From Ascidiella aspersa (lineage: Eukaryota), in NCBI GenBank assembly GCA_963924565.1, contig OZ004614.1, positions 10,354,001 to 10,418,000 on the forward strand: a stretch of DNA of 64,000 bases. Direction: 5' to 3'. Position numbers and translations under genes: made by a program. Within the stretch, counting starts at the first letter, position 1; every line of letters starts with the position of its first letter. The notes under the pieces were generated by a model. It saw nothing but the letters and a program-made list of their open reading frames with translations. It made no database searches and was not told the DNA's origin. Positions 12,859 through 32,300 of this stretch are shown here, piece after piece.

Positions 12859-14191
12859 AATATTATTTGAGTTAGCGTTTGTTTTAATATTAATTATAAT
12901 AATACCCACCCACACCCGAACCTAAACATTTTGCCTTGATTTGATAATTGCTTGACCGCTGTAGTAGGATTCCAGACCAGCGCCACGCTATCTTATTAGC
13001 GACTTACAGTACTGCGTAGCGCACGTGGAAGTTACAATTCGACATACCTTCTTGTTCTGCAGCTGAGGGATTGGCGGACGAACTGAATACTTATACCACG
13101 CGGTCGTAGTCTTGTGAAAACGAACTACGCTCGCGCTATCAAAACACGCTGATATTCATCACGAGCCTAATCCTAATGTCCCTATCCTACATCAAACGAA
13201 GCTATGTCTACCCTACACTAACCGAAGTAGATAGGAATCGTTTTGTATATGCTAAAAACACAAATCGCTGTTGACAGAACTGGTTGTTGCTATGGTTTCG
13301 ACCACGTGCAGCGGTATTGAGGCTCAAGTTTAATTTAAATCTTTACTGTCATCTCGCGGATTAAAATTTAACTCAGCTAATAGCTATACCTTCTTATTAA
13401 GAGAAAATCTGCCAAACAACAACTGATACACATTAAACGCTTTCTTTTAGCAACGACTTAAATAAACATTTTCCTTGGCCAAATTAAAGCAACTTTTACT
13501 TGAAATCTTCCCCCAAAATGTTTACTTCTTATTTTTTTAGCCTGACCTGTTTTGACACAGAGACTCAACCATATTTTTATAAATTGCATTGTTTAATTGG
13601 AACGTTTGATTTCTACAAGCGAAAGAGAATATAATTACATTTTCATATAGTATACCATTGTTCAGGCGTTCTACAGTGTTTGACGTCGAAAATTGTGCGT
13701 TCGACGTAACAAAAGTGCAAATATTTCATGTCTCGGTACAACACACACGCACATACACAAGGCAACGGTTTTAGTGTTTTGGGGGTTAATCTAAAAGTAC
13801 TACATGCCAGATTACGAGGGAACAGTATATTTTGGTTATTGTGTGTTTAGCGTAAAAATGAGAAAAATAGAGAATCGGAAGACTGGATTGTAAAACAAAA
13901 ACTGGTGGCGTACAACAGTTTCGATGTGCAAACAATAAAAAGGTGCAAATATAGATTTAAAACATAGAAATCTCTTTCAAACGACGTCAAAGAATTTGAA
14001 CGATAAGAACCCTTAAAAAAATTATTTTGCAGTTGAAAACAATAAGGCAGCCATGTGCATAGACAAACAGACAAGGGCCAAGCCCCGCTGCAGCGTAAAC
14101 CAGCATGGACTACATCTCCGAAAATGTGGATAGAATGGTCAAAAACTACGTTTCTACGAAGAAGAGAGAGAAAGTGGCGGAATAAGCGATG

Positions 14192-17100
14192 TTACTCCAA
14201 AAGGTTTTCCATTTCGCGTTCTAAATCATCGGTGGATGATCTCTTCGAGTTCGTTTGACTTTGCGACTGAGACTGGAAGCTCATTCCTGTTAGGTCTTCG
14301 CCGGCGAGTTGTTTCATTTGTTCTTTTTGCTGAACGAAAAAACAATAACTCTTGTATTTTTTATGTTAACAATGGAAAGAAATGTTTTATTTCTTGCAAA
14401 TGTTTAGTTGATTTAGGACTAGGCGAACCATACATTTTATAAGATAGCTTCTACAATAATCTATACGGATAAGCAAGCATTTAATATAAAAAATATTAAT
14501 CTAATAATATTTAAAAAAGGCTTTTTAAAAATGCTTTCTTATCTATAACCAAAATTACATTTATGCACCACATGTTTCATATAACCTACTTTTAACGAAC
14601 TTTACATAAAACTTGTTTGAGATTAAAGTTAAAAATTTTCATATATATTTATACGTTATATTACACTGTTAAGTAAACGAAATGTTACCTGCTGCAACAA
14701 ATCGCCTTGGTCGTCTCCGAGGTCCATCAATCCTTTGATGGTTTCGTGAACCAAACTCGCGAGTTCAGCGTCAGTCTGATCTCCCTTTGACGCTTGCATT
14801 TGGTCGACTGCGTCCTGCAAGCAGAAAACGTGTTGATATTTTAAAGTTTCAAGTCGACAAATGAAGCAGTTTAAACTCAATGCTCGCAGCGTGTAGAGGC
14901 GCTAGATTCCATAATTGGTAAATTTTTTGCGCAATGCTCGAAATGTTCAAGTTTCTGTTTGTTTTCAAAACGCTCAAAAAAAGGCACTCGACTCAAACAA
15001 ATTTTGCACATATACAAATTGTTTGTTTTTCTATCTGTATTGAATCAAAGCATTTTTTAAGGCATAGTAAGATTCATAAATTTCGTGTACATTTTGACTG
15101 TAGCAATTTACCAAGGCGGACTTTTCCTTTTGAGTTAAGTTGACATAACTTACCGCTTGTTTGTAAACGTCATTAAGCTTGCTGTACGTTTAGCTTAAAA
15201 TGAATGCGTTTCAAAATTCATAGAATTAATAGTCGATTGTTAGGATGATACCTTGTGCCGGTGTTTGACCTGGGCTTGTGATGACTTTAATGGTTGAAAA
15301 AAAATATTTTTTTGCAAAAATGAAAACCGACTTTAAATTTAACATATGTCGTCATACGAAAATCTGGCAAACCTCGATGTTTGAGTGTAATTCCTCCTGA
15401 CTGCTGACACTTTCCGCAGCCTTCGCGTTCAACTGCTCGATCGCTTGACTCGCCTTCGCCTCGAGGTTGGTCGGTAGGTCAAGGTTGTCCGAATTTAGCT
15501 TTGCAATCACCTGACGCACTTCGCTCTGGAACTCTTGGTGCGCGATCGCGTCCGCCACGGATTGCTGCAAAACGTAATGCAAATTGTTTTGCTCTGTCAA
15601 AACACAACGGTGACAAGCCCTTTGGAAGCAAAACTTTTATTGAAACAAAGCCCATTGTGAAACCCTTGGAGCAACTATAGCCGGGGTGGCCAAAACGCGG
15701 CTCGCGAACCCAGTTATATGCGGCTCTTACGTTCATGTTGCACTTATGATTTTTGGAACGTTTTGATTTCGTTTGGCAAAGGTATAGCGGGATTATTGCC
15801 GGTTCCGACTCAGACTCTTTGCCTTAAGGCCATTGTATTGTTAGTAACAATTTTGAAACAAGACAAACGGAAAAAATATTCCCAAATAGTATTGACAAAT
15901 GACATTGTATCGAGAAATGGGTGTTTTTTTCACCCAATGCGTCGCGTCTCACTTCTAAATTAAAATTTTGTCCACGCACTTTTTTCGCGCTTCGTGCGAT
16001 CGCTTTGTGGGAGTGAGTAAGAAATGGGGTGATAGGCAATTTTTTTGTTCTAGTGTGTAAAGAGTGGTTCTATAGGAAGGCAGATTTTTTTATTGTTACA
16101 ACCCACACTTTACACGTTGCAGATGGAATAGTATTGTTTGGAAAAAGGATCATGTCGACACTTAGGAAAAGAAAAAAACGCAATGTTGCACGCTGCATGT
16201 TCTTTCCATCATTATATCTAATCTGGAAGCCATAAGAAATTAATTAAAGTAAAATCAATAGAATAATTTTTGTTGTTGATAAACTGCTATCGGATTGGAC
16301 AAAATTCAATTCCCTTCAGGCAACTTGCAAACATTAGCTCACCTCTTCCAACTCGCTGTCCAGATTGGAAATCTGTGCTTGAATCTGCTGCTGAGCTTGC
16401 TTCTGTGCCGATTCGCCTCCCTCGCTTAAGGATCCTGCGTTGATCTGATTGATCAGCTTCTGGATGTCGCTGTTTAGTTCCTCCTGTGGGCGAAGCGATT
16501 TTGGTAAAGAAAAGAAAAAGCGGCATTTTTGCATAATTTATGGGAAAGTGGCATGTTTAACTAATTTATGGGAAAGTGTCATGTTTGGCTAATTTATAGA
16601 AAGTGGCATTTTTGACTAATTTATGTTTCGGTAAAGCAGGGTTTATTAGAGTGGGCCAAGAAGGTTTAGCAGAGAGGGGGTGCGAAGGGCTACTTCAAAT
16701 TGATTTAATACCAAGCATTGCTGCTGAGAATAACTGTTTGGTGCTGCTTTTTCGGCCGTTACTGACACATGTTATTTTATGCCAATACCTTGATCTGTTG
16801 TTCTCAGTGGTATTAATTTTGTTTTGCCTTTTTTGCCTTGAGTTAAAGCGTCCCTAATGTAGTTACACATTGTGTTATCAGGAGGTTTCGCACAATGCCA
16901 TTCCCAAACTATATTTTGTTAACTTTTACTATAGAAATGCCTTTTTTCGCGTTTGGCACGAAATTAATCTACATTTTACTACGTGTTCTCCCGCTTTAAG
17001 GAAATCTTTGACAAGAGCGCGGTACCCAGAATGGCAAAATCTTTTGCTGTGTGAAATTACATATTCTGAAACGACAATGAGTTTTTAGCGAGTAATCTGA

Positions 17101-17381
17101 AACCGACCTTTTAGTGTAACGTTTTAACCTTATTTTTACGTTCATCGTATAAAGTCTTGTAAAACAACGACAGTTTAATGCAGCATTCTTAGTTTATAAT
17201 AATACCGTAGTGATTATTCCCAAACAAATATAATTGCTATACACAAAAAAGTACGACAAAAAAACTAGTTTTATACCTGGTTGTTGGCAGCGTCTTGAAT
17301 TGATTCAAAACCCTGACTTTGTGACTGGGAGCTGGTTTGACTTTGCCCGTTGCCGTTGTTGATTTGGATCTGGGTTTGACT
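14192..17381 (-). CDS. Mucin C-terminal Cys-free Gln/Glu-rich tail, 5 phase-0 exons ending in TAA at 14192-14194
   Basis: [23 protein letters not shown]...; [17 protein letters not shown]...; [23 protein letters not shown]...; [11 protein letters not shown]...; [45 protein letters not shown]. All have canonical splice sites. Confidence 0.82.
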
Positions 17382-20300
17382 CTAAATGTTAACATAAAAT
17401 GCCCTATTTAAACAAATATACCCCAAATGCGTCCAGCAAATCAACATGGAAACCTATTTAAATTGCATTCCAAACTTAGAAAATCAAGTTTATTGCTTTA
17501 CCTGATGGTTTCCACCGGTGCTGCTCGATCCGCCGGTTTGCGTGTTGTCGTTGGAGTTGACAAGACCGTCGATGATGCTGTTCACCTGATCTTGAATGCT
17601 CTCTACCTCCTGACTCTGACTCTGCGACTGCGACTGCGAACCGCCTCCGCCGGAGCAACACTTCACTCGAATCTCATAGTCCTCGCACACAGGATGCGTC
17701 GTCTGCTGGTTGGCGATGCACTCAAGACCAACGTTTACGTCGCAACTCACCACCTGCCATTCCTGGTAGGAGGCAAACTCGGCCACGGTGCCACCCACCG
17801 GCCTGCATTCGATCTCGGTGGGCGACTCACAGATCTCCGTGCCTGTGCTTCTAATCTTCTCATATGTTTCGATGTCGTCGCGCTCCGGCATTTTCGGACG
17901 CGAAGCGCTGATCCAATCGGACCAAGTGCACGCTTCAGTCGTGGTCGTTGCCTCGGTGGTTGTTGTTGTTGCCACGGTAGTGGTTGTTGCAACTGTGGTG
18001 GTAGTTGCCTCAGTGGTTGTGGTTGGTTCTGGAGTTGGTTTCATCGTCGTAGTCGTGGTTGTTACTGGTTCTTGTGGAACAGTAACTGTGGTTATTTCAC
18101 CAGAACCTGATTCTTCTTCAGTTGTGGTCGGTACTGGTTTGGTTGCAACTGTGGTAGTGGTCACTGGTTCTTGGGGAACGGTAACTGTGGTTATTTCACC
18201 AGAACCAGATTCTTCTTCAGTTGTGGTCGGTACCGGTTTGGTTGCTACTGTGGTAGTGGTCACTGGTTCTTGTGGAACAGTAATTGTGGTTATTTCTCCG
18301 GAACCAGATTCTTCTTCAGTTGTGGTCGGTACTGGTTTGGTTGCAACTGTGGTAGTGGTCACTGGTTCTTGTGGAACGGTAACAGTGGTTATTTCTCCGG
18401 AACCAGATTCTTCTTCAGTTGTGGTCGGTACTGGTTTGGTTGCAACTGTGGTAGTGGTTACTGGTTCTTGTGGAACGGTAACAGTGGTTATTTCTCCGGA
18501 ACCAGATTCTTCCTCAGTTGTGGTCGGTACTGGTTTGGTTGCTACTGTGGTAGTGGTTACTGGTTCTTGTGGAACGGTAACAGTGGTTATTTCTCCGGAA
18601 CCAGATTCTTCTTCAGTTGTGGTCGGTACTGGTTTGGTTGCTACTGTGGTAGTGGTCACTGGTTCTTGGGGAACAGTAACTGTGGTTATTTCTCCGGAAC
18701 CAGATTCTTCTTCAGTTGTGGTCGGTACTGGTTTGGTTGCAACTGTGGTAGTGGTTACTGGTTCTTGTGGAACGGTAACAGTGGTTATTTCTCCGGAACC
18801 AGATTCTTCTTCAGTTGTGGTCGGTACTGGTTTGGTTGCAACTGTGGTAGTGGTTACTGGTTCTTGTGGAACGGTAGCAGTGGTTATTTCACCAGAACCA
18901 GATTCTTCTTCGGTTGTGGTCGGTACTGGTTTGGTTGCTACTGTGGTAGTGGTCACTGGTTCTTGTGGAACTGTAACAGTGTTTATTTCTCCGGAACCAG
19001 ATTCTTCTTCAGTTGTGGTCGGTACTGGTTTGGTTGCTACTGTGGTAGTGGTCACTGGTTCTTGTGGAACAGTAACTGTAGTTATTTCACCAGAACCAGA
19101 TTCTTCTTCAGTTGTGGTCGGTACTGGTTTGGTTGCTACTGTGGTAGTGGTCACTGGTTCTTGTGGAACAGTAACTGTGGTTATTTCTCCGGAACCAGAT
19201 TCTTCCTCAGTTGTGGTCGGTACTGGTTTGGTTGCTACTGTGGTAGTGGCTACTGGTTCTTGTGGAAGGGTAACAGTGGTTATTTCTCCGGAACCAGATT
19301 CTTCTTCAGTTGTGGTCGGTACTGGTTTGGTTGCTACTGTGGTAGTAGTTACTGGTTCTTGTGGAACGGTAACAGTGGTTATTTCTCCGGAACCAGATTC
19401 TTCTTCAGTTGTGGACGGTACTGGTTTGGTTGCTACGGTGGTAGTGGTTACTGGTTCTTGTGGAACGGTAACAGTGGTTATTTCACCAGAACCAGATTCT
19501 TCTTCGGTTGTGGTCGGTACTGGTTTGGTTGCTACTGTGGTAGTGGTCACTGGTTCTTGTGGAACAGTAACAGTGGTTATTTCTCCGGAACCAGATTCTT
19601 CTTCAGTTGTGGTCGGCACCGGTTTGGTTGCAACTGTGGTAGTGATCACTGGTTCTTGTGGAACAGTAACTGTGGTTATTTCTCCGGAACCAGATTCTTC
19701 TTCAGTTGTGGTCGGCACCGGTTTGGTTGCAACTGTGGTAGTGGTCACTGGTTCTTGTGGAACGGTAACAGTAGTTATTTCTCCGGAACCAGATTCTTCT
19801 TCAGTTGTGGTCGGTACTGGTTTGGTTGCAACTGTGGTAGTGGTCGCTGGTTCTTGTGGAACAGTAACTGTGGTTATTTCACCAGAACCAGATTCTTCTT
19901 CAGTTGTGGTCGGTACTGGTTTGGTTACAGCTGTGGTAGTGGTCACTGGTTCTTGTGGAACTGTAACAGTGGTTGTTTCACCAGAACCAGATTCTTCTTC
20001 AGTTGTGGTCGGCACGGGCTTGGTTGCTGCGGTGGTGGTGGTTATTGGTTCCTGCGGCGCTGGTGTGGTAATCGTTGGTTGACAGGCAGCAGTGCATCCG
20101 CAAGCTTCGACATCGGTGTACGAATACTGAATTTCGGTGCCGTTCTTACATTTCATAGCGATAACACGCTGAACGGTTTCGGTAGGCTGGCAGCAGGAGC
20201 ACTTACTGTTAGCACCGTATTCCGTCCAAAAGTAGCTGTCGCGGCAGAAGCCATCGCAGTAAGATTGTGAGACGGGTTGGTTAGATGCACAGCCGTCAAT

Positions 20301-23300
20301 GACCATGTACTCAGGTTTGGTACTGATGTGCCTTCCGCAGGCGAAGCATTCGCTCTCGCATTTTAGACAGCAACCGTCGTCGGTCGAAACCACCTTGCCA
20401 TTGTTGTTAACGCAAGCATCGTGGTCAAATGGCGGGCACGGGTTTTTCATGCACTTCTCCTCGTGGAAGCCGTGCTCGTTCATTTCCTCGCTGCACATGC
20501 ACGTGTGGCATTTGTCAGGCGCCCATTGTTGGCCGAGCTGTAACAACATTTTGCATTACTAAACTTGTAAAATACTATAACCTTCCATTAATAATTCAAG
20601 TATTTAAGCATCTACGTGACGTTTGGTGAATTTCAGAAGTCTTCGATCAACATTAAAACATGACATGGTTGTATTTTGGGAAATATAAAATTAGACTAAT
20701 ATATTTTAAACCAAAACGCAATTTAAAAACTTGCCATTTGTTTAAACAAGCAAAAATACAGACAAAGATTGTGAGATTTCATAAGGCTAAACCGTACAAC
20801 TAATCTTTTACGTCGTTTGTATTGTTTTATTTTTTATTTTTACAAGGCAATCATTTGTACAATAAATCAAGGGCGACGTTGTGTGATCTCAGGGTTCAAC
20901 TTCTAATACACAAGACCGCTAAAGGTTACTCACCGGTTTCTCCATGTCATTGTCGCAGCAGACCTTCTTGGGCTCGCACGAAAACGTGGGACAGCAGTCC
21001 TCCGTCGTTTCGACAAGTACATGACAGGCCGGGCATTGTGGCACAGTTTGCGGAGGACAGGGGTAACTATTCTCGATGACAACCATGCCGTTAATGTTGG
21101 TTACGCACATGTACGATGAGCAATTGTGCACGAATTCCCAGTTGCTTCCAGACTTGAAAACAACAAATGCGACAGATGACAATTAAAGTTCGTTTAAAAC
21201 AGCATTCTATGGAAATTTTGGTGATGTTAGGTAAGAGATTGCTACGCATGTTTAGACGTATGGTATGAGGTTACTTTTGATATCATAGTTACAAGTTTTT
21301 TTACCAGACAATACAAAATATAACAATAAATGGATGAATTTAAAGACAAGCCGACTATTTTATGTCAGTATTTCATAACTTGGCGTTTCTATCAATAAAA
21401 AAACGCAGTCATTATTTGGTTATATACTTTTTAAAGTATTATGTTGTGTTTGCTAAAAATACCAACGCTGTGCGACTTCCTTAATTCGTACAAAACAACG
21501 GCATGTCGTCTGTATGAAGATACATTCATCGGGTTAAAACATACAAGGGTCTTTCACTTACCTCCTTGCAGCTCAGTACTCCTTCTTCGTGAACCGCGCA
21601 TCCGTTGGGCACGCATTGGCCGCAACACTCGCCAGCGGGAACAATGTAGTCGTGGCAGGGTGGACAACTTGTATCGCAGTCCATGACCACACAGGTCTCG
21701 ACGTGGCACGAGTTAGCGGAGTTAACGTCGTCGAGGCACTGGCAGTGCGTGCACACGTCAGGCTGCCACTCTTGGCCGGGCTGAAAAAATAATACGGTTT
21801 TAAGGGCTGAAATAATAACGTTTTAAGTAAAAAAATTATACTTTAACCTGACAAAGCATGGTTGTGCGAAAGCTTGTCGAGACTTCAACACAATTTGTCT
21901 TTATATAGTGCAACCTGATTACTCTATTTGGAATTAGACAAATACGGTGATTTACAAAGATTGTCAAGTAAAAGTAACTCACGTTCGTGCAGATATTCAC
22001 GTTCGTACGGGGTTCTAAACAAACGTATTTTTGTCCGATTGCACCATGTGAAATAGTTAAATTTGTGGAAACTTTGGCCGATGTTGAAATGGGTTAAGAA
22101 TAAGATTAATGTTAATTTGTTGCTACAATTCGAACACAGTAGCAAAGGATCAACGAAGAAACCACAAAATGGTTATCGAGTCAGTTGACCCTGAAGGTAT
22201 AAGGAATTGAGGTTACAGCAGTTAAGGCGATATAAACGTAGTATTTTTTAACAAACTATGGTAACTTTAAAATTTGGAAAAAATAACCGAAAATACAAAA
22301 ATATATACTATCTAAAGAAAGAGAAGGCTTGTTCAATAAAATAATTGCATCCACTATAATACTTCTTGGCGTTCTATAACTCTTACCGCAATCACGTCAA
22401 TCACCACTAGTAAAGCCCGTTCTCTTATTTCAAAATACGTTATCAACACGTTATACTCAAGTTTAAAAGCCAAGTATCCGGAAAACAAGAAGCTGGTTGA
22501 ATATATATATTTTGCCAAGTGAGGCCGTCAGTTTATTAGTACTGATTTTTGTTTTAACTAAAGTAAGAAAGGGTTGGTGTCGTGTTGTGTGGCCCACTCA
22601 CGTTGTACACTTTGCCGTCGACCAAGCAGATGTTCTTGCTGACGCACGTCACGTGACGACAGTTGCACGAGTCGACTTCGATCACAGATTCCTCGCACTG
22701 GGAACATGGCTGGTTGGATGGACACTGGTTGCACTCTGCGAGCATTACGTATACTCTATGTTAATGCGAGGCTTAGCAAACTGGCGCAAAATCACTTAAT
22801 GACCAGTCGCAGCAATTCTTAACACTGCGACAATTTAGAATAAACACTGTTTGATATTTGTTTAATTTTCGCAAAACATAAACAGTTGGTTTGCACCTAA
22901 ATTATTTTAATTCAACCCAATACATTTATAAGTATTTCTATTTGAAATCAGCTGACGCGTTAGCAAAAATAATTTTCTTAATACTTTTAATATTCGATTC
23001 GCCGTTAACCTCAACAAGATAAAACTAGTTCAGAAATGATTTAATTGAAAGTAATTAACTAAGCGCTGTAAAAGACAATGGTTTTGTGAAACTTGAACTC
23101 CATCTTTAAAGAGCAAGGTAAAACAATTTTGCCTGCTGAATCTCTTATGGCACTAAGTCAGTGAATTTACTGAAGTGCATTCAGTCACCTTTTTACACGG
23201 CTTACCAGGTAATTTGGGTAAGTGATTGACTTGGACTTTAATCGTTTACACATTTATTATTACCTTCCAAGGGTTTTAATTAAACTACATTACTGAAACT

Positions 23301-26300
23301 GGGTTGACGTCAAATCCGGTATTTTAACGTCAATTCCTACTTGAAAAGAGGTTTGCTTCCTACTAAACTTGGTTTGTTATAGATGTTTTCCATGCGAAAT
23401 ATCGAAATGGAACTAGTTTGACATTTTAATAGCTTAACATTTATTTTGAAAGCCGTTCCTTTTGCTCGTACTCGATTTGCCATAATCCTGAATAGGAAAA
23501 AAATCCCACGCTTACCGCAAGAATGCAACGGGCAGCATTCGGTCTCGTGGGTGACTAGGTGCTGGTTGGAGCTGCACTGGGGCGCCTCGGGACATGGATT
23601 GCGTGATGTGTTGCAGTGGCAGTCGTACTCCGGGATGCACTCGTCATTGTCGATGCGTTCCGGTACGTATCCCGGTGGACACTTTGGAACCGGAACCACG
23701 TCACAGCCCTCCTCGCCCTTGCCAAGTTCGTAGTTGCAGGCTGCGCGAAACAAACAGCCGTTTTTTGGCGAAATAGCGAAACAAAAGTTTCGTTTTTAAC
23801 GCGTAAATGCTGCATTTTTTGCCTTTTTACTTTGCGGGTTTTGACTTCTTTTTTTACAGTTATAAGGCTAGCCGAACGACAAACTTGTTTTAAGTTGTGT
23901 ATACTTTGTTGGCACAACACACTATACTGGATGTTTTCTGTAAAGGAACACATTAAAAGGTAAAGCAGGGTAAAACACGGCACTTGCAAAATAAAAAAAA
24001 ATAGAAAATATAAGAAATTTGAAATTTGAAACAAGAAACAAAGCTGCACACGTAGAATGAATATCAAAAGCAATACAGAAGTTGTTTATTTTCAACATTG
24101 TTCTTCATTTTCAACATTGTAAAAAAATGCTGCTTACTGTATGCTTATTATTCATTCCACGGTTACATACAACTTCCAGCTATTATTCTCCAAAGACTCT
24201 ATTCACAAGTTTTAAATCTAGGTTTTAGACATGTGTTGTCGAAACATCAGACTGCAAGTTTCTGATAAGCAAAAAAAATCTCATATAGCTTAAATGAAAG
24301 AAACTCACTGCAGTCGTATTGTGGGCAGCACGGGTCGGTTGTAACCCTGCGTTGGGGCACCTGACAGGGGCCACAGCTGGGTACCTCCTCTTGGAAACCA
24401 GCTGGACAGGTGACCTTATCGCAGACGATTTCGTGGCCCACTGAACAGCTGCACATCGTGCACTCGTCTTGGAACCAAGTTTCGCCGAACTGAAAAAAAG
24501 CAGCAAACAGTGAAGATATGCCAAATCAAGTTTTTAAAGTACACGGTCCGATTGAAAAAATGTCCCATACTTGACATTTTATTCGGATACCGATAGACAA
24601 TATTTGAATACAAAGTATCGCGATACGGCCGAAATCAAATTGCGTCATTACTATGCTTAAAACAAACAAAATAGACAAATATCAAATGGTAAAGGTTTTT
24701 TTTTTCAATTTGTTAAGTCAAAACGTGTTTTAGCGTTAGCAAATTCAGTTATCTCCAGAATCTACTTTTTTGAAATAGTTAATAACTTTTACATTATAAT
24801 CGCTGCGTTGAATCGCATATATTTCCGGAATTCTCATATAAATTTGGTATCGGATCAGCACCAATGCATCCCTAGTATCGGCTAAAGGCACCGATATTAA
24901 CGAACGTTCTTAAACTAACCAGCAGTTAGCGCCAGGTGGATATGACGTTTAATTACAGGATTTAACATCAGCTTGGAATTCAATTACACGCTACACCGCC
25001 AGGTAAACTGGTTAATTAGGTTTAGGGCACGTTTGAAAGTGTGCGTTCTGTGTTTTTAATTGGGAATCAAGCAAACATATAGGCACTGCTGGGCATAATG
25101 ATCGGAGGTTGTAGTAAAGCGTATAACAGTATCAAAACCCATACAGAAAGAGGTATTATTATGAACGTTTCAAACAACTCTTTATTCATTTTCAACATCT
25201 TAAAAAAAGATGTTGAAAATAAATAAAGAGTTATTCGAAACGTTCAAATTGATACCTACTTCTGTATAGGCTTCGATATTCCAATTACGTATATGTATTG
25301 TGTTCTGACTTTTCTTAAAAAAGAAAGTTCTCATTGGCTGCGCTGCGAATCTACCGCACACCCATGGTGTACTTGTTATGCGAAACAAGTTGTGAAAAGT
25401 TGCATTATTATCGAGGCAAACACTTTGGTTTACCGTGGTTTTTCGCTGTTGCACTCACCCTGTACGTGTTGTTGTGCTCGTCGATGCACTTGTTGTCGCA
25501 CTTGAAGCAGCAGCCGTTCTCGGTGAGCACCTTCTTACCACCGCGAGCCTCACAAGTCGTAGGATCGAAGGGCGGACACCAGATGTGAGTGCATTTTACC
25601 TCCAGGAATCCGGTCTGCCTGTTCAGCTCGCTGCCGCACACGCAGTTGTGGCAGTCGTCCACGCTCGGTGTGGGTTGGCCGGGCTGCAAGTGTCAAAAGG
25701 TGTACAAAAGTTAGTGATCATAGCGCGTGTATTAGAAACCACACCGATGGGTTTATTCCGTGTTAAAAAGAGCGCTTATGCGATTTTTAAATTCGACTAA
25801 ACTCGATGTTCTTTCTTTGTCGCGGAGTCGGGATGACTTTGGGTGTGCTTTCACTTTTTTAAACCACTTTACTTAACTTTGACCTTTGGGTAAATTGATT
25901 CGACTAAGGTTATATTTAAACCAAATTTGACTTAAACTCAAGGGTTGAAGACAAACTAGTGGATTTTATAACCTACTTTTTAATCGACTGGGACTTATTG
26001 TTTTTTTTAAAATTGAGTTATTTGCAACACTGTCGTATTGGTCAGTAACAGTTTCTTAAAAGAAGCCTGAAGGCAAGCCCACCGAACGTATCATTAAAAA
26101 CAAAGGAATAGCTTCAAAACCACGAACAACAACTTACCAGAATAGCCGAGCCGTCCACGCAGCAGACGTTATCCGGCACACACTCGAAACTGGGGCAGCA
26201 GTCCACAGTGGTCTGCTCGAGTCGGTAGCAAGTCGGGCATGACTTGACATCCAGAACCGGGCAGTTGATCGGGCTTGTTGTAATCTCGGTGTTGCCGTTG

Positions 26301-29300
26301 CTGTCCATCACGCATTGCTTGGTAGTGCAGTTGGACAATTCGTCGTGGGACTGGCCGACCTGAAAGGTGGAAAACGATAACCTGTTAGTGCTTTGTGCGT
26401 GGGTGTTATCCCTGTTTTCGCAATAAACCATCGTAGGGCTAAAAAGTATGATCTATTGTCTAGGTCTCCCTGATCTTAACAGTCGCCTTTCGTTGCCGTT
26501 TTTTTTCTGTGCGATTGGCAATACAGCGTTTTTAGTACATAGAAACATCTATATTTATATTTAGTCACACAAACAAATATAAACGCAAGAAAATAATTCT
26601 CCGTGCGAGACCTTATAGATTGACTGTTTAACGCTTATCCATTACAGTTTTTTGTCAAATGTGTAATACTTGACCTTAAAACCTAATCTGTTTAGCGCTC
26701 GAATAAAACACTTTCACAGGCCGGTCGAAAAATCACGATCCAACTCAAACGGGATTTTCTAAAAGTGAAAACGTGTCGAAAAGCCCTACCTCATCCACAT
26801 TATACCACACAGCACACATATATGTAAAACCTGCCCATATAAATCCGCCTAACAACTGCCGCCTAAAGTCCTCCTTACCTCGGCACAGAACATCTCTTCG
26901 TCCGCTCCCTGTACATGGCATCCTGTGTCGAAGCACTCTCCGCAGCATTGTCCAGCCACCGGTCTGTATTCGGAGCAGGGCGGGCAATAGGTGGAGCAAC
27001 TGTAGGCCATGCACTGGTATGCCAGGCAGCCGTGCTTGTCGGGCATCTGGTTTTCGGCACAGGTGCACTCGGTGCAAAGGTCGGGGAACCACATATCACC
27101 GGGCTGCGAAGCAACATTATTAAACGCTGTTTAGAAAGTATTTCGGATGAACTTTATCCGGGGCTCAAAACAAATCCGTTCTATTCTAAAATGAATCCAC
27201 AATATAGCAATCACTGTTGATGGCAATTAGAAGTAAAATCTGTATGAGACACAATTTATTAATTTAACAAAAAGCTATATATTTTTATCTTGTTAAATAT
27301 TTTATTTCAGAACATTTCTCATACGTAAAATTTCCTGTGATTTTCCTGATGTTCAATACAACCAAATAAAAATCAAAAACCATGGAAAACGATAATAATT
27401 TAACGTGTAAAATTAACATCGCCAATTAAAGTTGATTTTAACTCAACTAGATATTGTAAAATGTAATTCGGCATACAAGGTTTGAAGATATACCGAAACA
27501 AACAGCACGGAAAAAGGACACTGTTTTTCTAAATTACTGTTTAAACTGGTCCACATTTGTTACCTGGTAGTCGGTGCCGTTGTCTCTGCAGACTCCCTTA
27601 TTGACGCAAGAGTAGCTCTCACACCCGCAAGCGTCCTCGTGGATCACTGTGCTCTGGCACTGGCCGCATATCGTAGAGTCTTCCGCGCACTTGTTGCATA
27701 CTGCGTCGCGCGAACAAAAACACTTTGGTTATGCGCAATATCTTATACACAGCGCTGTCGCGCACAAAGCATTACCTTTGTAGACATTTGCATCTATTTC
27801 TGCTTAATTTAATAAAAATGTTATTTACTGTAGAACACCAATTTTAGATGGAATTCAACACCTGTCTTAACAAAGTTTAGTTACAAAATCAGTCACTATA
27901 ATTACACTTTATGATAATTAATAGTTTATAAAATACTTTACTCGAATATCGCAAAATAACAAAAGATCATGGCAAACTCTCTTTAGAGCAAAACAAGACA
28001 CAAAATACCAATCAAAAAACAGCTCCTCTGGTAATTGTAAGTTTTACCAACGTTTCGACAACCTATGTTAGTCGCCTTCGTCAGGGTGAATGACATGGAA
28101 AAGACACAAAATGGTGGCAAAAAGCTGCCGTCGCCCTGACGTCGACTGAAACAGAACAAACCTTACCGCAAGTGTGAACGGGACAGCAATCTCCAGGGGT
28201 GGTAACAAGATGGTGGAGGGGCGGGCAGGCGTGCGGTGTGGGGCAGGGGTTCCTGTCCGGGTTGCACTCGCACTGGTACTCGGGGATGCAGTGGCCCGGG
28301 TTGGCCTGGTTCATGATAAAGCCGGGTTCGCAGATAGGCTGGGGAACTGCCTCGCAATCTCCCTCTCCCTTACCAAGTTCGTAGTTGCAAACTGTCAAAA
28401 AATTGTTTTGAACTTGTTGCTCGCGTGCAAGTGGGCATATTTTGCCTTGGCGTGAAGATTTTTATTGTGTAACTCAAAAAGGCCTTATTCGTAATCGTTC
28501 TGAAAATGTTATTTAAAGTAGAATGATTAAAATTTTGCCAAGTATATTAACTCTATATTTGTGGTAAAGTTATACCGATGTATTGCCTATTACATGACGT
28601 TTATTTGTATAATATTTAACGACAAAAAAAATACAGTCCACTTTTTCAAAAAAAGATCGTCTTCGAAAAAGTGCACAGCGCCTTTGATTTCACGATGCAA
28701 TATATCGGCGCTCAATACACACTTCAAACAGCCCATAAAAGTCTAGGCCTAATTTTGTCAGGCAGATGATGTTTCCAACCAACTAGAAACAAGAAACATT
28801 ACAAGATAGGCCCGACCAGTGTTGTAATGACTCAAGTCATTGACTTGACTAAAGTGCACTTAAGTCACCGTTTTCAAATGACTCGACTTGACTTAAGTCT
28901 TTTGGACAAATGAATTGACTTGGACTTAAGTCATTTTGTCAAATAACTTGGAAGTAAATTAAGTGGTTTTTTTTAATTTATCTCAAGTTTTGCAACATTA
29001 ACCACTTTTATTGCTGTCCATTGCGCTTGTGTGTGTTTTTTTAATTGAATTGTTGCTTGCAATGGGACGAGTTTGCCAATTTTAATTATTTAACAATTTA
29101 CTTTTATGACAATGACATGACTTGAAATTGACTTGCTCTCATAATGACTTGACTTGGACATAGGTTATTTTTCAAAATACTTGACTTGGACTTAAGTCAT
29201 TTCAAACTGACTTTTTAACAACACTGGGCCCGACCACAAACATCTTACCACAGTGGTACTCGGGGCAGCATGGGTCTGATCCCCGCACCAGTTCGGCAAC

Positions 29301-32300
29301 GTGGCAGGGGGCACATTCCGGGACTTCCCCGGTCCAGCCCCCTGGGCACGACGTTGGGGTGCAGGCGATGGCCTGGTTCTCCATGCACGAACAGAAGGTA
29401 CATTCCTCGCCCTCAGGTATCCAGCTTTCTCCGTACTAAACAACAATGTAATATACGTTAGCACCAAAGAGGGGTGGATTGCAAATGGCTGTCCACTAAT
29501 GGCTTTTATAATTTCTAAACGTTTAAAATTAAACCGATTTGGAAAAACGATACGGGTTAGCATTCGAAGTTTGTACACTGTTGGACGGAAACTAACAATT
29601 TACTATGAACAACCTAAACACAGAGATTCAAAATGCGAAAGGTGGACATTTGTTGAAAAACAGTAACTAAAAACGATGGATTATATTATGCATTTAGTGT
29701 AAAAAGGGTTCGAGATTAGAGAAATAGGCTTCGTTGATATTAACGGCGTTAAAAATGGACATTGTAAAGTTTACCATAGGCATATAGGCAATTTTCTGTT
29801 CTTGGTTGACCAACCATAGTAAAATGTACACACCCTAAAGCAACCATAGGTTACAGGAACGTGTTCTACACTTGTCGCAGAAAAGCTATAGACCAACTCG
29901 AAAGGGTTTACAGCTGCTATGGATAGTTCTTCAAACGAAAGCCAACCAAACCTTGTAAATGGTGCCGTCTTCTGCCACGCAGTTGGTGCAGTTTGACACG
30001 TGTTCACAGTTGCCGTTCACAAGCACGGTGTCGGTGGGACAGAAGCATCCCTCGGTGGCAATCTCCTCGTAACAAGGCACTCCGCTGTTGTAGTCCGCGC
30101 AGCTCTGTTCACAGTCGGGCATGCACGGCAAGTAGACGCGGTCAGACGGGCATTCAGGTGCTACGGAAAAGTTGTTTAAAAATGTTTATGGATTTTGTTG
30201 CAGTTAAAGGTTTGGCGCATTTGCGAAGAAAGATGGAAGGTTGTTTGACTTTTTTATAAATAGGATTATGGCTTGTTTTGTTACAATTTTTGAGAATAGG
30301 GCTACCGTACATGTACAAGACATTTGATAATAAAACTTAAACACTAATTTTAGCATTTTTTTTAATAAAACATTTTTTGCATAAGCAAATTTACACTAAT
30401 TGTTTAGTATACCTAATCTAAAACATAACCCGGTTTATGGTAAAAGAAAACAATTCATTGGAAGTTCTCATTGTAAAGTCTGTTGGCCTTGGGGGTTCTT
30501 TGGACTAGTTTTAAGCGGTGCACAAAGGCCTAATTGGAATATTTGTGATTACTTAAATTTGTGTGTGCAATTGGAATTATTACTTTCAAAAGAACAAAGT
30601 TTAATTGAAAAAAAAATGCTTGTAGGACCGAAACAGAAGATTTTTAATACTATAGTTTTATGATGTCAATTTATGACATAATTTTTGCCTCGCTTGTCTG
30701 CGCATTGCAAAACTGCATATGTTTTGCCGGAATTTAGTTTCGCCCTTTTGTTTGCATTCGCCTCACAAAACTGAGCGAAACTTACGACAGAAGTCTTCGC
30801 TACGCCAGTTGATGCAGATTCCCTCTTGCATGCAGGCTGCTGCGTAACCGTAAACAGCCTCACACGCCGAGTAGTTACCGCACTGGGAAGTGTCGTACTG
30901 GCAGATCTCATAATAGCGATCCGGGGCTAGAACAGCGTGGCACGCCTGGAATACAAAACGTCGTAACAAGTTATTTCAGCGTAAAAGTTGGACAAAACGT
31001 TTTTTTTTTAAAACAAAGACAACAAATAGAAAGGCGGTAGAACACACAGGTTGTCTAATTTAGTATACGGCTACGGCACTTTTATAACACAACAACAAAT
31101 AACTAAAGCTCAAAAAACTAACGCACCGAATTGGAATACAAACCGTCGTTACAGATTGGCTTTACAGTTGATTTTCAAGCTAATGCCATTTGCTTGTTCG
31201 ATTCTAACCGGAGTAACTGTTATGTAACTTAAAACTAATAAAGCCATGCACATGTAGCAATGAAAGGTGTTGTTGTAACATTCAGTTAATCAAAACCTAT
31301 GCAAATCCACCTGTAATGTGTTCTCGTAACGCAGACTTTTATGTGCTGCCAAAATTATTTAAAATGTGGCTTTATTGTGTGTAATTTCAACTACAATATA
31401 GTATATTTATGCAAGTGTCGACCGTTGTTATCATAAAACGCCATGATTAGTTCTGTTACATGCAAGTTTTTATTCCTCTTTTGCAACTAATAAACATTAG
31501 GGGGCGGTGAAATGCAGAGTTGGTATAATTCAGTAGATAGGACTTTAAATATAGCAACTTTATAGCACTGAAAAAATTAATAAAGCTTTAAAAACCTAAA
31601 AAAAAAAGATTTGTAAATATTTTTTTTACTACTTTTAAGATCTTTGGCACTTGCCTCGAATACGTCAGACTTAATGATCTCGCACTTCTCTGAGGGGGGC
31701 ACTGTGCAAGGTAGAGGGGGTCGGAAGCAGGATTCGGACTCGTTGAAAACCAGCCAGCTGTTGCCGAAGTCTTCGATCTCGGTGACAATGTGGCCCGATC
31801 TGTTGGTGAGTTCGTCACTCTGGTCGTTGTTGCATACGCCTGTGTTGAATCGATTAAAACGTTAATTACAACAAAGCGTCATACTTTGTCCATTGTAATT
31901 CCGTGAAAAATATTTGTATTTACGTAAAAAAGTATATAAACGGGCGTACTTTTATTCTTGACTAGGTTCAATAAATTGATGACTTTAATTGTATAAAAGT
32001 GTTAATAGAATCAAAAGTGTTAACTCGGTTAAAATCGTTTATTCTTTAGATAAGTTCCGCTTTGTGGATTCTATTGTTTCAATGAGTGTGCTAAATAGCA
32101 AAGCAAAAAGTTGTAAAGAAAATTAATTAAGATCGCGTGTAGGTGATCAAAATTGTTAGTTTTTCATAGGTTGCCAAGAATATATTACACCAAGCAAAAA
32201 TTAAATCGACATACAACTATGTTCATCTAAAAATAAGGAGTGATGGTTGGCCTGGACAGACCAAAAGAATCATTATTATTATACGAACACCCAAACGCTA

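What the first reader, a model, noticed from the sequence alone, without database searches (positions are those of the whole stretch)
18055..20060. Twenty EEESGSGE motifs at a fixed 33-residue spacing: a possible mucin-proteoglycan hybrid
Seen: each repeat pairs a Thr/Pro/Val segment with EEESGSGE. All 20 copies keep this motif, while substitutions fall in the T/V segments or are synonymous. Almost the only serines in the array are those of SGSG. Known: Ser-Gly dipeptides flanked by acidic residues are the xylosyltransferase acceptor motif (bikunin EEEGSG, the SGSG of syndecans and serglycin), and vertebrate gel-forming mucin PTS repeats do not use it. Inference: up to about 40 regularly spaced chondroitin, dermatan or heparan sulfate chains alternate with O-GalNAc brushes on a disulfide-polymerising scaffold.
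Basis: partly seen in the sequence, partly recalled or inferred. Interest (0 to 1): 0.8.

Follow-up and report, generated by a model that had tools for sequence, protein, structure and literature searches.

The report
Sea-squirt mucin with periodic proteoglycan-type sites
A transcribed exon of a sea-squirt gel-forming mucin gene carries 20 near-identical 33-residue sugar-carrier repeats, each ending in an acidic Ser-Gly motif that fits the signal for attaching long glycosaminoglycan chains; related sea squirts keep that signal, but nobody has yet shown that chains are attached.

Summary
On the minus strand, one open exon (window 17502-20537, 1012 codons) holds 20 copies of EEESGSGE at exactly 33-residue spacing, and 40 of the 41 serines in the array lie in SGSG. 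The exon is transcribed and spliced.

It belongs to a roughly 42-kb gene of the gel-forming mucin/VWF family. The domain order is EGF-FN2-CBM14-EGF, four D assemblies, VWC modules and a cystine knot, as published for Ciona Ci-GFM1. Here the array, a CysD domain and a Gln-rich tail follow the knot.

The proteoglycan reading is partly supported.
- The second Ser fits published xylosyltransferase-1 acceptor rules.
- Four other tunicate-like lineages keep an acidic Ser-Gly site (EESGSGE, EETGSGE, EPEGSGE, EEESSGWE) although unit length and copy number differ.
- Two relatives lack the repeats.
- The genome encodes xylosyltransferase, GlcAT-I, CHGN and EXT homologues and a single Fam20 locus.

Only one Ser per unit is conserved, so about 20 sites is more realistic than 40. 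The invariance inside the array mostly reflects its youth. No chain has been demonstrated. I rate this a new variant of a known kind. The closest functional analogues are the chitin-binding chondroitin proteoglycans CPG-1/2 of C. elegans.

The parts
17502..20537 (-). Single coding exon, 3036 nt = 1012 codons, phase 0/0: VWC-like module, cystine knot, 20-unit PTS array, T-rich linker, CysD, start of the Gly/Ser-Gln tail
   Evidence: Open frame. Donor CAG|GTAAAG at 17502 shown by a transcript contig of run X3 and 2 RNA reads of X12. Acceptor TTACAG| at 20537 inferred from sequence and from homologous ORF starts.
20298..20537 (-). VWC-like Cys-rich module preceding the knot
   Evidence: Cysteine pattern. 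47% identical to the in-gene duplicate at window 25483-25686. Aligns to P0054, P0033 and P0159. No Pfam hit of its own.
20079..20297 (-). Cystine-knot (CK) domain, internal rather than C-terminal
   Evidence: Pfam PF00007 Cys_knot, E 6.7e-7, 30 bits, above the cut-off of 24. The only CK of this type in the genome.
18096..20075 (-). 20 tandem units of 33 aa, consensus [33 protein letters not shown]; each has a Thr/Pro/Val segment plus the acidic Ser-Gly site
   Evidence: RNA reads of X12 run from the last unit back into the array: 14 reads with 'goes back 97/99' joints.
17925..18095 (-). Non-periodic Thr-rich linker (TTTTEA-type) between the array and CysD
   Evidence: Translation. In-frame GTT length variant at 17958 in two other runs of the same species label (X2, X3).
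17658..17924 (-). CysD (Mucin2_WxxW) domain
   Evidence: Pfam PF13330, E 3.3e-22, 79 bits. 68% identical to Ciona savignyi H2Z9B9 and 73% to L005.
17502..17657 (-). Gly/Ser-Gln-rich start of the C-terminal tail, still within the big exon
   Evidence: Translation. Aligns with the tails of P0048 and P0063.
14086..17381 (-). Five downstream exons of the same transcript (17276-17381, 16343-16482, 15372-15564, 14689-14813, 14086-14329 and beyond) encoding the Gln-rich tail and 3' end
   Evidence: One 1400-nt transcript contig of run X3 joins them to the big exon, and every joint is GT..AG on the minus strand. X12 RNA reads cover 14000-14416.
20922..29435 (-). Two tandem copies of a six-exon block of VWC and other Cys-rich C-domains (20922-24525 and 25411-29435) upstream of the big exon
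   Evidence: Stop-to-stop frames. VWC hits at 21529-21822, 24310-24525 and 26852-27130. Collinear with P0054 and P0003.
29934..48824 (-). D assemblies (VWD/C8/TIL exons of D1, D2, D'D3, D4)
   Evidence: Pfam: C8 at 48513-48824, 41868-42179, 42515-42724, 36667-37053 and 30766-30975; TIL at 47602-47844, 41186-41545 and 29934-30185; VWD at 44894-45271 and 39967-40239. Collinear tblastn with C. savignyi P0003 at 45-76% identity.
52658..56357 (-). N-terminal head: EGF exons, fibronectin type II, CBM14 chitin-binding domain, EGF
   Evidence: Pfam fn2 E 1.7e-13 (54554-54787), CBM_14 E 2.8e-9 (53173-53373), EGF-type hits at 56160-56357, 54905-55117 and 52658-52819.

Best explanation
Shown: the stretch is the large 3' exon of a single-copy, transcribed gel-forming-mucin/VWF-family gene of a tunicate (sea squirt). 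The domain order is EGFs-FN2-CBM14-EGF-D1-D2-D'D3-D4-VWC modules-cystine knot, then a 20 x 33-residue Pro/Thr/Val array, a CysD domain and a Gln-rich tail. Inferred: each unit has two parts. The first is about 25 residues that would be densely O-glycosylated on Thr, as in any mucin. The second is an acidic Ser-Gly site, whose conserved Ser is the second one of SGSG. In the early secretory pathway this Ser is xylosylated by the genome's single xylosyltransferase, extended to the linker tetrasaccharide (helped by the single Fam20, presumably the xylose kinase) and elongated. By the vertebrate rule that chondroitin is the default, the chain is most probably chondroitin/dermatan-type. The product would be a disulfide-linked, chitin-binding polymer carrying about 20 polyanionic chains per subunit, perhaps more if the first Ser is also used, at roughly 33-residue intervals just beyond the dimerising knot. 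Such chains would hydrate, charge and space a chitin-based gut membrane or mucus net, much as CPG-1/2 do in the nematode eggshell.
For: Repeat, motif and reading frame. Transcription, strand and splicing: (X3 transcript contig; X12 RNA reads with first mate on +; GT..AG joints on the minus strand). Domains. Collinearity with Ciona proteins. Single copy. Fit to the acceptor rules: XT1 needs Ser with Gly/Ala at +1, tolerates uncharged residues at -1 and prefers acidic residues at -2 to -4; the peptides PAAEGSGEQDFT and QEPEGSGGG bind (PMC5992326). The C. elegans chondroitin motif is E/D-G/A-S-G (PMC8418075). Cross-lineage retention: L005/L006 have at least 6 units of ...EAPEESGSGE, P0054 has ...TTEETGSGE, L009/L010 have 2 units of ...TEPEGSGE, and P0048 has at least 4 units of ...EEESSGWEPE, although unit length varies (28-33 aa) and CysD identity to this gene is only 52-73% where measured. 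Motif codons vary synonymously within and between lineages with no amino-acid change in ESGSGE across 32 copies. All 4 variable columns of the motif are synonymous, with a chance probability of about 0.002 under uniform mutation. Trp at +2, as in P0048, is a known enhancer (PMC10570366; PMC13405426). Enzymes in the same genome: Xylo_C/XT, Fam20 (32), CHGN (52), GT64/EXT (53), GlcAT (54). Site density is 39.5 per 1000 aa against a median of 0.37 in 168 relatives. Precedent for chitin-binding, T/V/P-rich chondroitin proteoglycans: CPG-1/2 (PMC2063922).
Against: There is no direct evidence of xylose or any GAG on this protein in any species. Authors in the field warn that motifs alone are ambiguous predictors (PMC8418075). 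The whole unit is conserved across lineages, not only the Ser-Gly site (VPxxP and TTTV are also invariant), so conservation does not single out the site. Two relatives have a short PTS with no such site (L007/L008 and P0033), and L007 is 96% identical in CK-coding DNA to motif-bearing L010, so the array is dispensable in some backgrounds. Within the array, the contrast between motif and rest is not significant by independent columns (p = 0.26). Dense neighbouring O-GalNAc might compete with or mask the site. The acceptor rules come from human XT1, not the tunicate enzyme. The relatives are unnamed metagenomic or transcript contigs, so the species tree is unknown.
Confidence: 0.5

Rival explanations
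1. Unmodified acidic spacer. The EEESGSGE segment is not xylosylated. It is a flexible, negatively charged, O-glycan-poor hinge between Thr brushes. Its roles could be Ca2+-mediated compaction in secretory granules, charge repulsion after release, or binding of cationic ligands. Its conservation reflects those roles.
For: The whole unit, not just Ser-Gly, is conserved. Glu is the second commonest residue of the array at 100 of 660. The array is dispensable in L007/L008 and P0033. Motif-only prediction of GAG sites is unreliable (PMC8418075).
Against: This does not explain why one Ser-Gly pair is retained while the flanking residues change (SGSGE, TGSGE, EGSGE, SSGWE). It also does not explain why Ser is otherwise almost excluded from the array, at 1 of 41. 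The variants seen are the ones known to work as xylosylation or GAG sites.
Confidence: 0.28
2. Xylosylated but not elongated, or only sparsely occupied. The sites receive xylose or a capped short linker, and few or none carry long chains, so the protein behaves as a mucin with minor extra glycans.
For: Briggs and Hohenester note that XT1 is unspecific and may xylosylate more sites than are elongated (PMC5992326). The 20 sites sit close to dense O-glycosylation.
Against: All sites have Gly at +1, the feature those authors link to productive elongation. The genome has an expanded CHGN family. A single Fam20 locus is present; if it is the xylose kinase, as reported for tunicates (PMC5865150), it would promote linker maturation.
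Confidence: 0.12
3. Secretory-pathway phosphorylation. The second Ser lies in S-x-E (SGE), the Fam20C/Golgi casein kinase motif, and once it is phosphorylated the first Ser lies in S-x-pS. The array would then be a phosphoserine-rich, Ca2+-binding tract.
For: S-G-E is present in this array, in L005/L006, in P0054 and in L009/L010. One Fam20-family locus exists in the genome.
Against: P0048 has SSGWE, which has no S-x-E but still has acidic residues followed by Ser-Gly. Zhang et al. report that tunicates appear to have only Fam20B (xylose kinase) and to have lost Fam20C (PMC5865150), and only one Fam20 locus was found here. One exon could not decide its subtype: 74 bits to Fam20C against 73 bits to the xylosylkinase.
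Confidence: 0.05
4. No function of its own. The motif hitch-hiked in a recently amplified unit and is kept identical by concerted evolution; its resemblance to a GAG site is coincidental.
For: Mean pairwise identity of the units is 92% and shared variants mark block duplications. The motif-versus-rest contrast is not significant. Copy number ranges from 0 to 20 among relatives.
Against: Independent arrays with different unit lengths and different codons keep the site. Within arrays, synonymous changes accumulate in the motif without amino-acid changes.
Confidence: 0.05

Closest known systems
Ciona Ci-GFM1 (gel-forming mucin of the chitinous gut envelope membrane; Nakashima et al. 2018, PMC6109156)
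   Same: Same domain order from the head to the knot: FN2, chitin-binding CBM14, D1, D2, D'D3, D4, VWC, CK. Tunicate origin. Collinear with Ciona-like proteins P0003 and P0054.
   Different: Ci-GFM1 is described as 2880 aa, ending at the CK, with only a 50-aa central PTS (RACE-derived). Here the CK is followed in the same exon by a 660-aa array, a CysD and a Gln-rich tail. Direct comparison with LC072665 was not possible, so orthology versus paralogy is open.
Vertebrate gel-forming mucins MUC2 / MUC5AC / MUC5B
   Same: D assemblies, CysD domains within PTS regions, VWC and CK. They are the best-scoring long relatives of the exon through the CysD domain.
   Different: In vertebrates the PTS and CysD regions lie between D3 and D4 and the CK is at the C-terminus. 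In the sampled relatives, acidic Ser-Gly sites are rare (median 0.37 per 1000 aa) and none shows a periodic one. They have no chitin-binding head.
C. elegans chondroitin proteoglycans CPG-1 and CPG-2 (Olson et al. 2006, PMC2063922)
   Same: Secreted proteins that combine peritrophin-A/CBM14 chitin-binding domains with many acidic Ser-Gly chondroitin sites. CPG-2 has 34 predicted sites in a repetitive SG region, and CPG-1 has a Thr/Val/Pro-rich mucin-like half. They work in a chitin matrix.
   Different: No VWD/C8/TIL/CK polymerising scaffold and no sequence relationship tested or expected: this is an analogue, not a homologue. In CPG-1/2 the chains were demonstrated; here they are only predicted.
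Bikunin and syndecan-1 GAG attachment sites (XT1 acceptor peptides QEEEGSGGGQGG and PAAEGSGEQDFT)
   Same: Local sequence. This array has EEESGSGE and the relative L010 has EPEGSGE; the latter matches EGSGE of syndecan-1 and EPEGSG of the tested bikunin variant.
   Different: Those are single or few sites in small cores, not a 20-fold periodic array inside a mucin domain.
Aggrecan CS-attachment region and lubricin/PRG4 (from my own knowledge; aggrecan's repetitive SG domains are also mentioned in PMC2063922)
   Same: Tandemly repeated Ser-Gly-bearing units densely substituted with chondroitin sulfate (aggrecan). A mucin-like Thr/Pro repeat protein that can also carry a GAG chain (PRG4).
   Different: Different scaffolds (hyalectan G1-G3; SMB/hemopexin), no VWD polymerisation, no chitin binding, and different repeat sequences.

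Membership tests
Gel-forming mucin / VWF family | Several N-terminal VWD-C8-TIL (D) assemblies | tested here: met
   VWD, C8 and TIL Pfam hits on successive minus-strand exons between 29934 and 48824. Collinear with C. savignyi VWFD protein P0003.
Gel-forming mucin / VWF family | Pro/Thr/Ser-rich (PTS) tandem-repeat domain encoded in one large exon | tested here: met
   660-aa array with T 33%, P 12%, V 14% inside a 3036-nt exon.
Gel-forming mucin / VWF family | VWC modules and a cystine knot at the C-terminal end | tested here: inconclusive
   VWC and Cys_knot are present, but the knot is internal: about 850 residues of the same exon plus five more exons follow it.
Gel-forming mucin / VWF family | CysD (WxxW) domain associated with the PTS region (MUC2/MUC5 type) | tested here: met
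   PF13330, E 3.3e-22.
Gel-forming mucin / VWF family | Dense O-GalNAc glycosylation and disulfide multimerisation | not testable with these tools
   Needs biochemistry. Conservation of the individual inter-chain cysteines was not examined.
Proteoglycan (xylose-linked GAG on a core protein) | Covalently attached GAG chain on Ser through the Xyl-Gal-Gal-GlcA linker | not testable with these tools
   No glycoproteomic data for this protein or its relatives were found.
Proteoglycan (xylose-linked GAG on a core protein) | Acceptor site: Ser followed by Gly/Ala, uncharged -1, acidic residues upstream | tested here: met
   The second Ser of each of the 20 motifs has G at -1, G at +1 and E at -3 to -5, checked against PMC5992326. 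The first Ser has E at -1; it was not tested directly, and the peptide scan reports tolerance at -1 only for uncharged residues.
Proteoglycan (xylose-linked GAG on a core protein) | Site retained in relatives | tested here: inconclusive
   Kept in L005/L006, P0054, L009/L010 and P0048. Absent in L007/L008 and P0033.
Proteoglycan (xylose-linked GAG on a core protein) | Biosynthetic enzymes present in the organism | tested here: met
   Xylo_C/XT, Fam20 (32), CHGN (52), GT64/EXT (53) and Glyco_transf_43 (54) in G000.
Ci-GFM1 orthologue | Head FN2 + CBM14, then D1-D2-D'D3-D4-VWC-CK | tested here: met
   against the published description.
Ci-GFM1 orthologue | Protein ends at the CK; sequence identity to LC072665 | tested here: not met
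   The reading frame and the transcript continue past the CK.
Fam20C substrate (secreted phosphoprotein) | S-x-E/pS motif conserved, and a Fam20C kinase in the organism | tested here: inconclusive
   SGE is present here but replaced by SGW in P0048. There is one Fam20 locus of unresolved subtype. The literature reports loss of Fam20C in tunicates.

The most novel reading that the evidence does not exclude
A chordate gel-forming mucin that is at the same time a chitin-binding, multi-chain (about 20-40 chains) chondroitin/heparan-type proteoglycan. The GAG array sits beyond the dimerising cystine knot and is followed by a CysD and a possibly coiled-coil tail. That would be a molecular intermediate between invertebrate peritrophic-matrix/eggshell proteoglycans and vertebrate mucus polymers, conserved in one ascidian clade.
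Probability: 0.4. Interest if true: 0.75.

Novelty: new variant of a known kind. Interest (0 to 1): 0.55.

Why it matters
Mucins (short O-GalNAc glycans on Thr/Ser) and proteoglycans (long xylose-linked chains on Ser-Gly) are usually treated as separate classes of secreted polymer. I found no report of a gel-forming mucin with a regular array of GAG acceptor sites. If the sites are used, tunicate gut membranes or feeding mucus would be built from a polymer that binds chitin, cross-links by disulfides and carries both glycan types. That bears on how the chitin-based barrier of invertebrates gave way to the mucin-based barrier of vertebrates (Nakashima et al. 2018). It would also give a natural, evolutionarily tuned test set (SGSGE, TGSGE, EGSGE, SSGWE) for the rules of GAG site selection. 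Independently of glycosylation, the conserved layout of cystine knot, PTS array, CysD and Gln-rich tail is an undescribed C-terminal architecture for this family.

Tried and rejected
1. The plus-strand ORFs of 764 and 699 aa across the array are rejected as by-products of the repeat. The splice joints are GT..AG on the minus strand, and the RNA reads all have the first mate on the plus strand.
2. Within-array selection on the motif has too few independent events: 4 against 19 variable columns, p = 0.26. I relied on cross-lineage comparison instead.
3. Fam20 subtype: one exon scores 74 bits against Fam20C and 73 against the xylosylkinase, so it is undecided. I used the literature statement on tunicates.
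A metagenome scan recovered related loci instead.
5. A second word search with three units plus CysD returned only P0048, because Thr-rich words swamped the candidate list.
6. P0155 looked rich in acidic Ser-Gly sites, but these lie inside folded CysD domains (DRDNPSGTGDW), not in a PTS.
7. Searches of the own genome found no paralogue carrying the repeat, one other CK-type match, which is the in-gene VWC duplicate, and only two weak CysD matches elsewhere at 30-37% identity.
8. Literature searches found no report of GAG on tunicate mucins.
Full report
**Observation**

Tandem Repeats Finder reports a single strong array at window 18064-20051: period 99 nt, 20.1 copies, 94% matches, score 3395. 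The region also stands out in composition, with GC skew +0.27 and AT skew -0.39.

The coding sense is the minus strand. A 1019-codon ORF (17490-20549) contains exactly 20 EEESGSGE motifs, and all 19 spacings are 33 residues. The 660-residue array is 33% Thr, 15% Glu, 14% Val and 12% Pro. Forty of its 41 Ser are the two Ser of SGSG.

Against the unit consensus [33 protein letters not shown]:
- The motif carries 17 synonymous and no non-synonymous copy-level differences.
- The rest of the unit carries 52 synonymous and 18 non-synonymous differences.

The repeat occurs nowhere else in the 308.6-Mb genome.

**How much the invariance inside the array means**

The units are young, with mean pairwise identity of 92%. 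Shared variants such as TCC-GGA versus TCT-GGT mark block duplications, so the copies are not independent observations.

In units 3-20:
- The motif has 4 variable columns, all synonymous.
- The rest has 19 variable columns, 8 of them non-synonymous and all of those singletons.
- The contrast gives Fisher p = 0.26 by columns and 0.018 if copies are wrongly treated as independent.

Four of four synonymous columns has a chance of about 0.002 under uniform mutation. The amino acids are therefore constrained, but so is the whole unit.

**The exon and its transcript**

Reads and contigs were laid on 14000-18160, with the long repeat left out as the tool requires.
- A 1400-nt contig of run X3 (same species label) joins 18090-17502 to 17381-17276, 16482-16343, 15564-15372, 14813-14689 and 14329-14086.
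- Every joint is GT..AG on the minus strand.
- An RNA-seq run of the same species label (X12, about 6% of the run read) covers the CysD side at depth up to 11.7, with the first mate always on the plus strand.
- X12 supports the 17381/17502 joint with 2 reads.
- X12 has 14 reads running from the last unit back into the array.

The donor is CAG|GTAAAG at 17502. The acceptor TTACAG| at 20537 is inferred from sequence and from where homologous frames begin. The exon is thus 17502-20537, 3036 nt, 1012 codons, phase 0/0.

The long plus-strand ORFs across the array are repeat artefacts.

**What flanks the array**

Going N-terminal to C-terminal within the exon (Pfam results):
- A VWC-like module.
- A cystine knot (PF00007, E 6.7e-7).
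- The 20-unit array.
- A non-periodic Thr-rich linker.
- A CysD domain (PF13330, E 3.3e-22).
- A Gly/Ser-Gln stretch that continues into the Gln-rich tail encoded by the five downstream exons.

Upstream minus-strand exons give the following:
- A head of EGF, FN2 (E 1.7e-13), CBM14 chitin-binding (E 2.8e-9) and EGF.
- VWD/C8/TIL exons of four D assemblies.
- Two tandem copies of a six-exon block of VWC-type modules.

Up to the knot, this is the order published for Ciona Ci-GFM1. That protein is an abundant component of the chitin-framed gut envelope membrane and is described as 2880 aa ending at the CK (PMC6109156).

The gene is collinear with Ciona savignyi H2Z9B9 (P0003, 45-76% identity from D1 to CysD) and with UniParc entry P0054. 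I therefore take the organism to be an ascidian; earlier notes of this scan say the same. In this genome the CK search found only this gene and its own in-gene VWC duplicate, and the CysD search found only two other weak matches at 30-37% identity.

The spliced model was searched exon by exon only; the joined protein was not assembled or searched.

**Relatives and the fate of the motif**

A length-unrestricted HMMER search with the exon, followed by a metagenome scan with a CysD alignment, recovered tunicate-like sequences with the same layout of CK, PTS, CysD and Ser-Gln/Gln-rich tail.

| Relative | Units | Unit or PTS sequence |
|---|---|---|
| L005/L006 (intron-less, probably transcripts; CysD 73% identical) | at least 6 units of 29 aa, and two CysD | [29 protein letters not shown] |
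| P0054 | 1 full unit, ends in the array | TTVPEAPVTTTTVPVKPTPTTEETGSGE |
| L009/L010 | 2 units | ...TTTVPPKPTPTEPEGSGE |
| P0048 | at least 4 units of 29 aa | TTTPQAPVTTTTVPVKTTTEEESSGWEPE |
| L007/L008 (= P0027/P0159) | none | short PTS with no such site |
| P0033 | none | short PTS with no such site |

L007 is 96% identical to L010 in CK-coding DNA and looks like L010 with its two units collapsed.

Aligned, the units are clearly homologous.
- The constant features are VPxxP, TTTV, a Lys, an acidic cluster, one Ser-Gly and a following Glu.
- The first Ser of SGSG is not conserved (S, S, T, E).

Codons of the motif differ synonymously within and between arrays, with no amino-acid change in ESGSGE over 32 copies.

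Among 168 CysD/CK relatives, those whose names I looked up being vertebrate MUC5/MUC2-like, the density of acidic Ser-Gly sites has a median of 0.37 per 1000 aa against 39.5 here. The only other high value outside this group, P0155, lies inside folded CysD domains.

**Does the site fit what xylosyltransferase accepts?**

In the human XT1 peptide scan and crystal structures (PMC5992326):
- Ser is required at position 0.
- Gly or Ala is strongly preferred at +1.
- Position -1 tolerates uncharged residues, even Trp.
- Acidic residues at -2 to -4 are favoured electrostatically.
- The syndecan-1 peptide PAAEGSGEQDFT and the bikunin variant QEPEGSGGG bind like the wild type.

How the sites here compare:
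- The second Ser here has G at -1, G at +1 and E at -3 to -5.
- L010 (EPEGSGE) is almost those two peptides.
- P0048 (EEESSGWE) has S at -1, G at +1 and W at +2.
- The first Ser here has Glu at -1, which is outside the reported tolerance.

The chondroitin motif found in C. elegans is E/D-G/A-S-G, and the same review warns that motifs alone are ambiguous (PMC8418075).

On chain type:
- CS initiation is the default.
- HS requires acidic residues C-terminal of the site.
- Trp at +2 helps (PMC10570366).
- A recent preprint defines a CS sequon made of an acidic cluster plus SGW (PMC13405426).

By these vertebrate rules the sites here, with only one Glu just downstream, would more likely take chondroitin-type chains. 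That is inference.

**Machinery in the genome**

The same genome encodes:
- One Xylo_C/xylosyltransferase locus (matches human XT1 structures).
- One Glyco_transf_43 (GlcAT) locus.
- Many CHGN-family exons.
- Three GT64/EXT loci.
- One Fam20 locus.

One exon could not tell Fam20B from Fam20C. Zhang et al. report that tunicates appear to retain only the xylose kinase Fam20B (PMC5865150).

**Weighing the readings**

I place about 0.5 on GAG attachment at some or all of the conserved Ser. The reasons are a close fit to the acceptor rules, retention of exactly that feature through changes in its neighbours, near-exclusion of Ser elsewhere in the array, the presence of the enzymes, and the precedent below.

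The rivals:
- Unmodified acidic hinge or Ca2+-binding spacer (0.28). It explains conservation of the Glu residues but not of Ser-Gly.
- Xylosylation without long chains (0.12). This cannot be separated from the main reading by sequence.
- Fam20C-type phosphorylation of S-x-E (0.05). It is weakened because P0048 lacks S-x-E and tunicates seem to lack Fam20C.
- Pure hitch-hiking in a young array (0.05). It is contradicted by independent arrays with different codons and unit lengths.

The main points against the GAG reading:
- There are no biochemical data.
- Two relatives lack the units.
- The whole unit, not only the site, is conserved.

**Comparison with what is known**

By family, this is a member of the gel-forming mucin/VWF group and resembles Ci-GFM1. 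Two departures stand out:
- The knot is internal, followed by PTS, CysD and a Gln-rich tail. This layout is shared by all the tunicate-like relatives found here.
- The PTS unit contains a periodic GAG-type site.

By function, the closest analogues are C. elegans CPG-1 and CPG-2 (PMC2063922).
- They combine peritrophin-A chitin-binding domains with many acidic Ser-Gly chondroitin sites.
- CPG-1 also has a Thr/Val/Pro mucin-like half.
- They act in a chitin matrix.

Those authors noted that no vertebrate proteoglycan has a chitin-binding domain. A tunicate protein with CBM14, a mucin scaffold and such sites would be the first chordate candidate.

From my own knowledge, aggrecan's repetitive CS region and lubricin/PRG4 are further partial parallels. 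I found no paper reporting GAG on a tunicate mucin or on any VWD-type gel-forming mucin.

**Limits**
- The relatives are unnamed contigs, so the number of species and their relationships are unknown.
- The acceptor of the big exon and the continuity of all 20 units in mRNA rest on the open frame and on relatives, not on reads.

**Verdict**

I rate it a new variant of a known kind, with interest 0.55.

Noticed in passing
window 17502-20297 and loci L005-L010, P0027, P0033, P0048, P0063: The cystine knot is internal. In this gene and in every tunicate-like relative recovered that includes the knot, it is followed by PTS and CysD (one or two copies); except in P0033, whose model stops after CysD, a Ser-Gln/Gln-rich tail follows. 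Vertebrate mucins and VWF, and Ci-GFM1 as published, end at the knot.
   Followed up: partly
window 20922-24525 versus 25411-29435 (minus strand): Tandem duplication of a six-exon block of VWC and other Cys-rich C-domains. The last exon of the upstream copy (25411-25692) resembles the VWC-like start of the big exon (47% identity) but lacks the knot and array. P0054 matches this block pattern only once.
   Followed up: partly
loci L007/L008 versus L009/L010: Two gene versions, with L008 and L010 from the same sample (JGI24158J21664). They are 96% identical in CK-coding DNA, 88% in CysD and 83% in a downstream exon. One has two EPEGSGE units and the other has none. Whether they are alleles, paralogues or sister species is unknown.
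   Followed up: partly
window 15668-16084 (intron of the tail region): Word depth in DNA-type runs jumps from about 60-100 to 3,000-11,000, with many loose ends and odd joints. This looks like a high-copy interspersed repeat sitting in the intron.
   Followed up: no
window 17958 and 17502-18090: Contigs of two other runs of the same species label (X2, X3) differ from the window at about 2.7% of positions across the coding stretch. They also carry an in-frame GTT insertion in a (GTT)n run, which adds one Thr codon in the linker. This indicates high heterozygosity.
   Followed up: no
window 14086-17381 and P0048/P0063: The Gln/Glu-rich, Cys-free C-terminal tail noted by another first-stage finding is spliced onto this exon in one transcript and is conserved in P0048 and P0063. 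Its fold (a coiled coil?) was not examined.
   Followed up: partly
G000 C1, C2, C4, C5: The CHGN (chondroitin GalNAc-transferase/synthase) family gives 40 exon-level matches at eight or more loci, including two head-to-head copies on C5 at 24.79-24.80 Mb. This suggests an expanded chondroitin-synthesis gene set.
   Followed up: no
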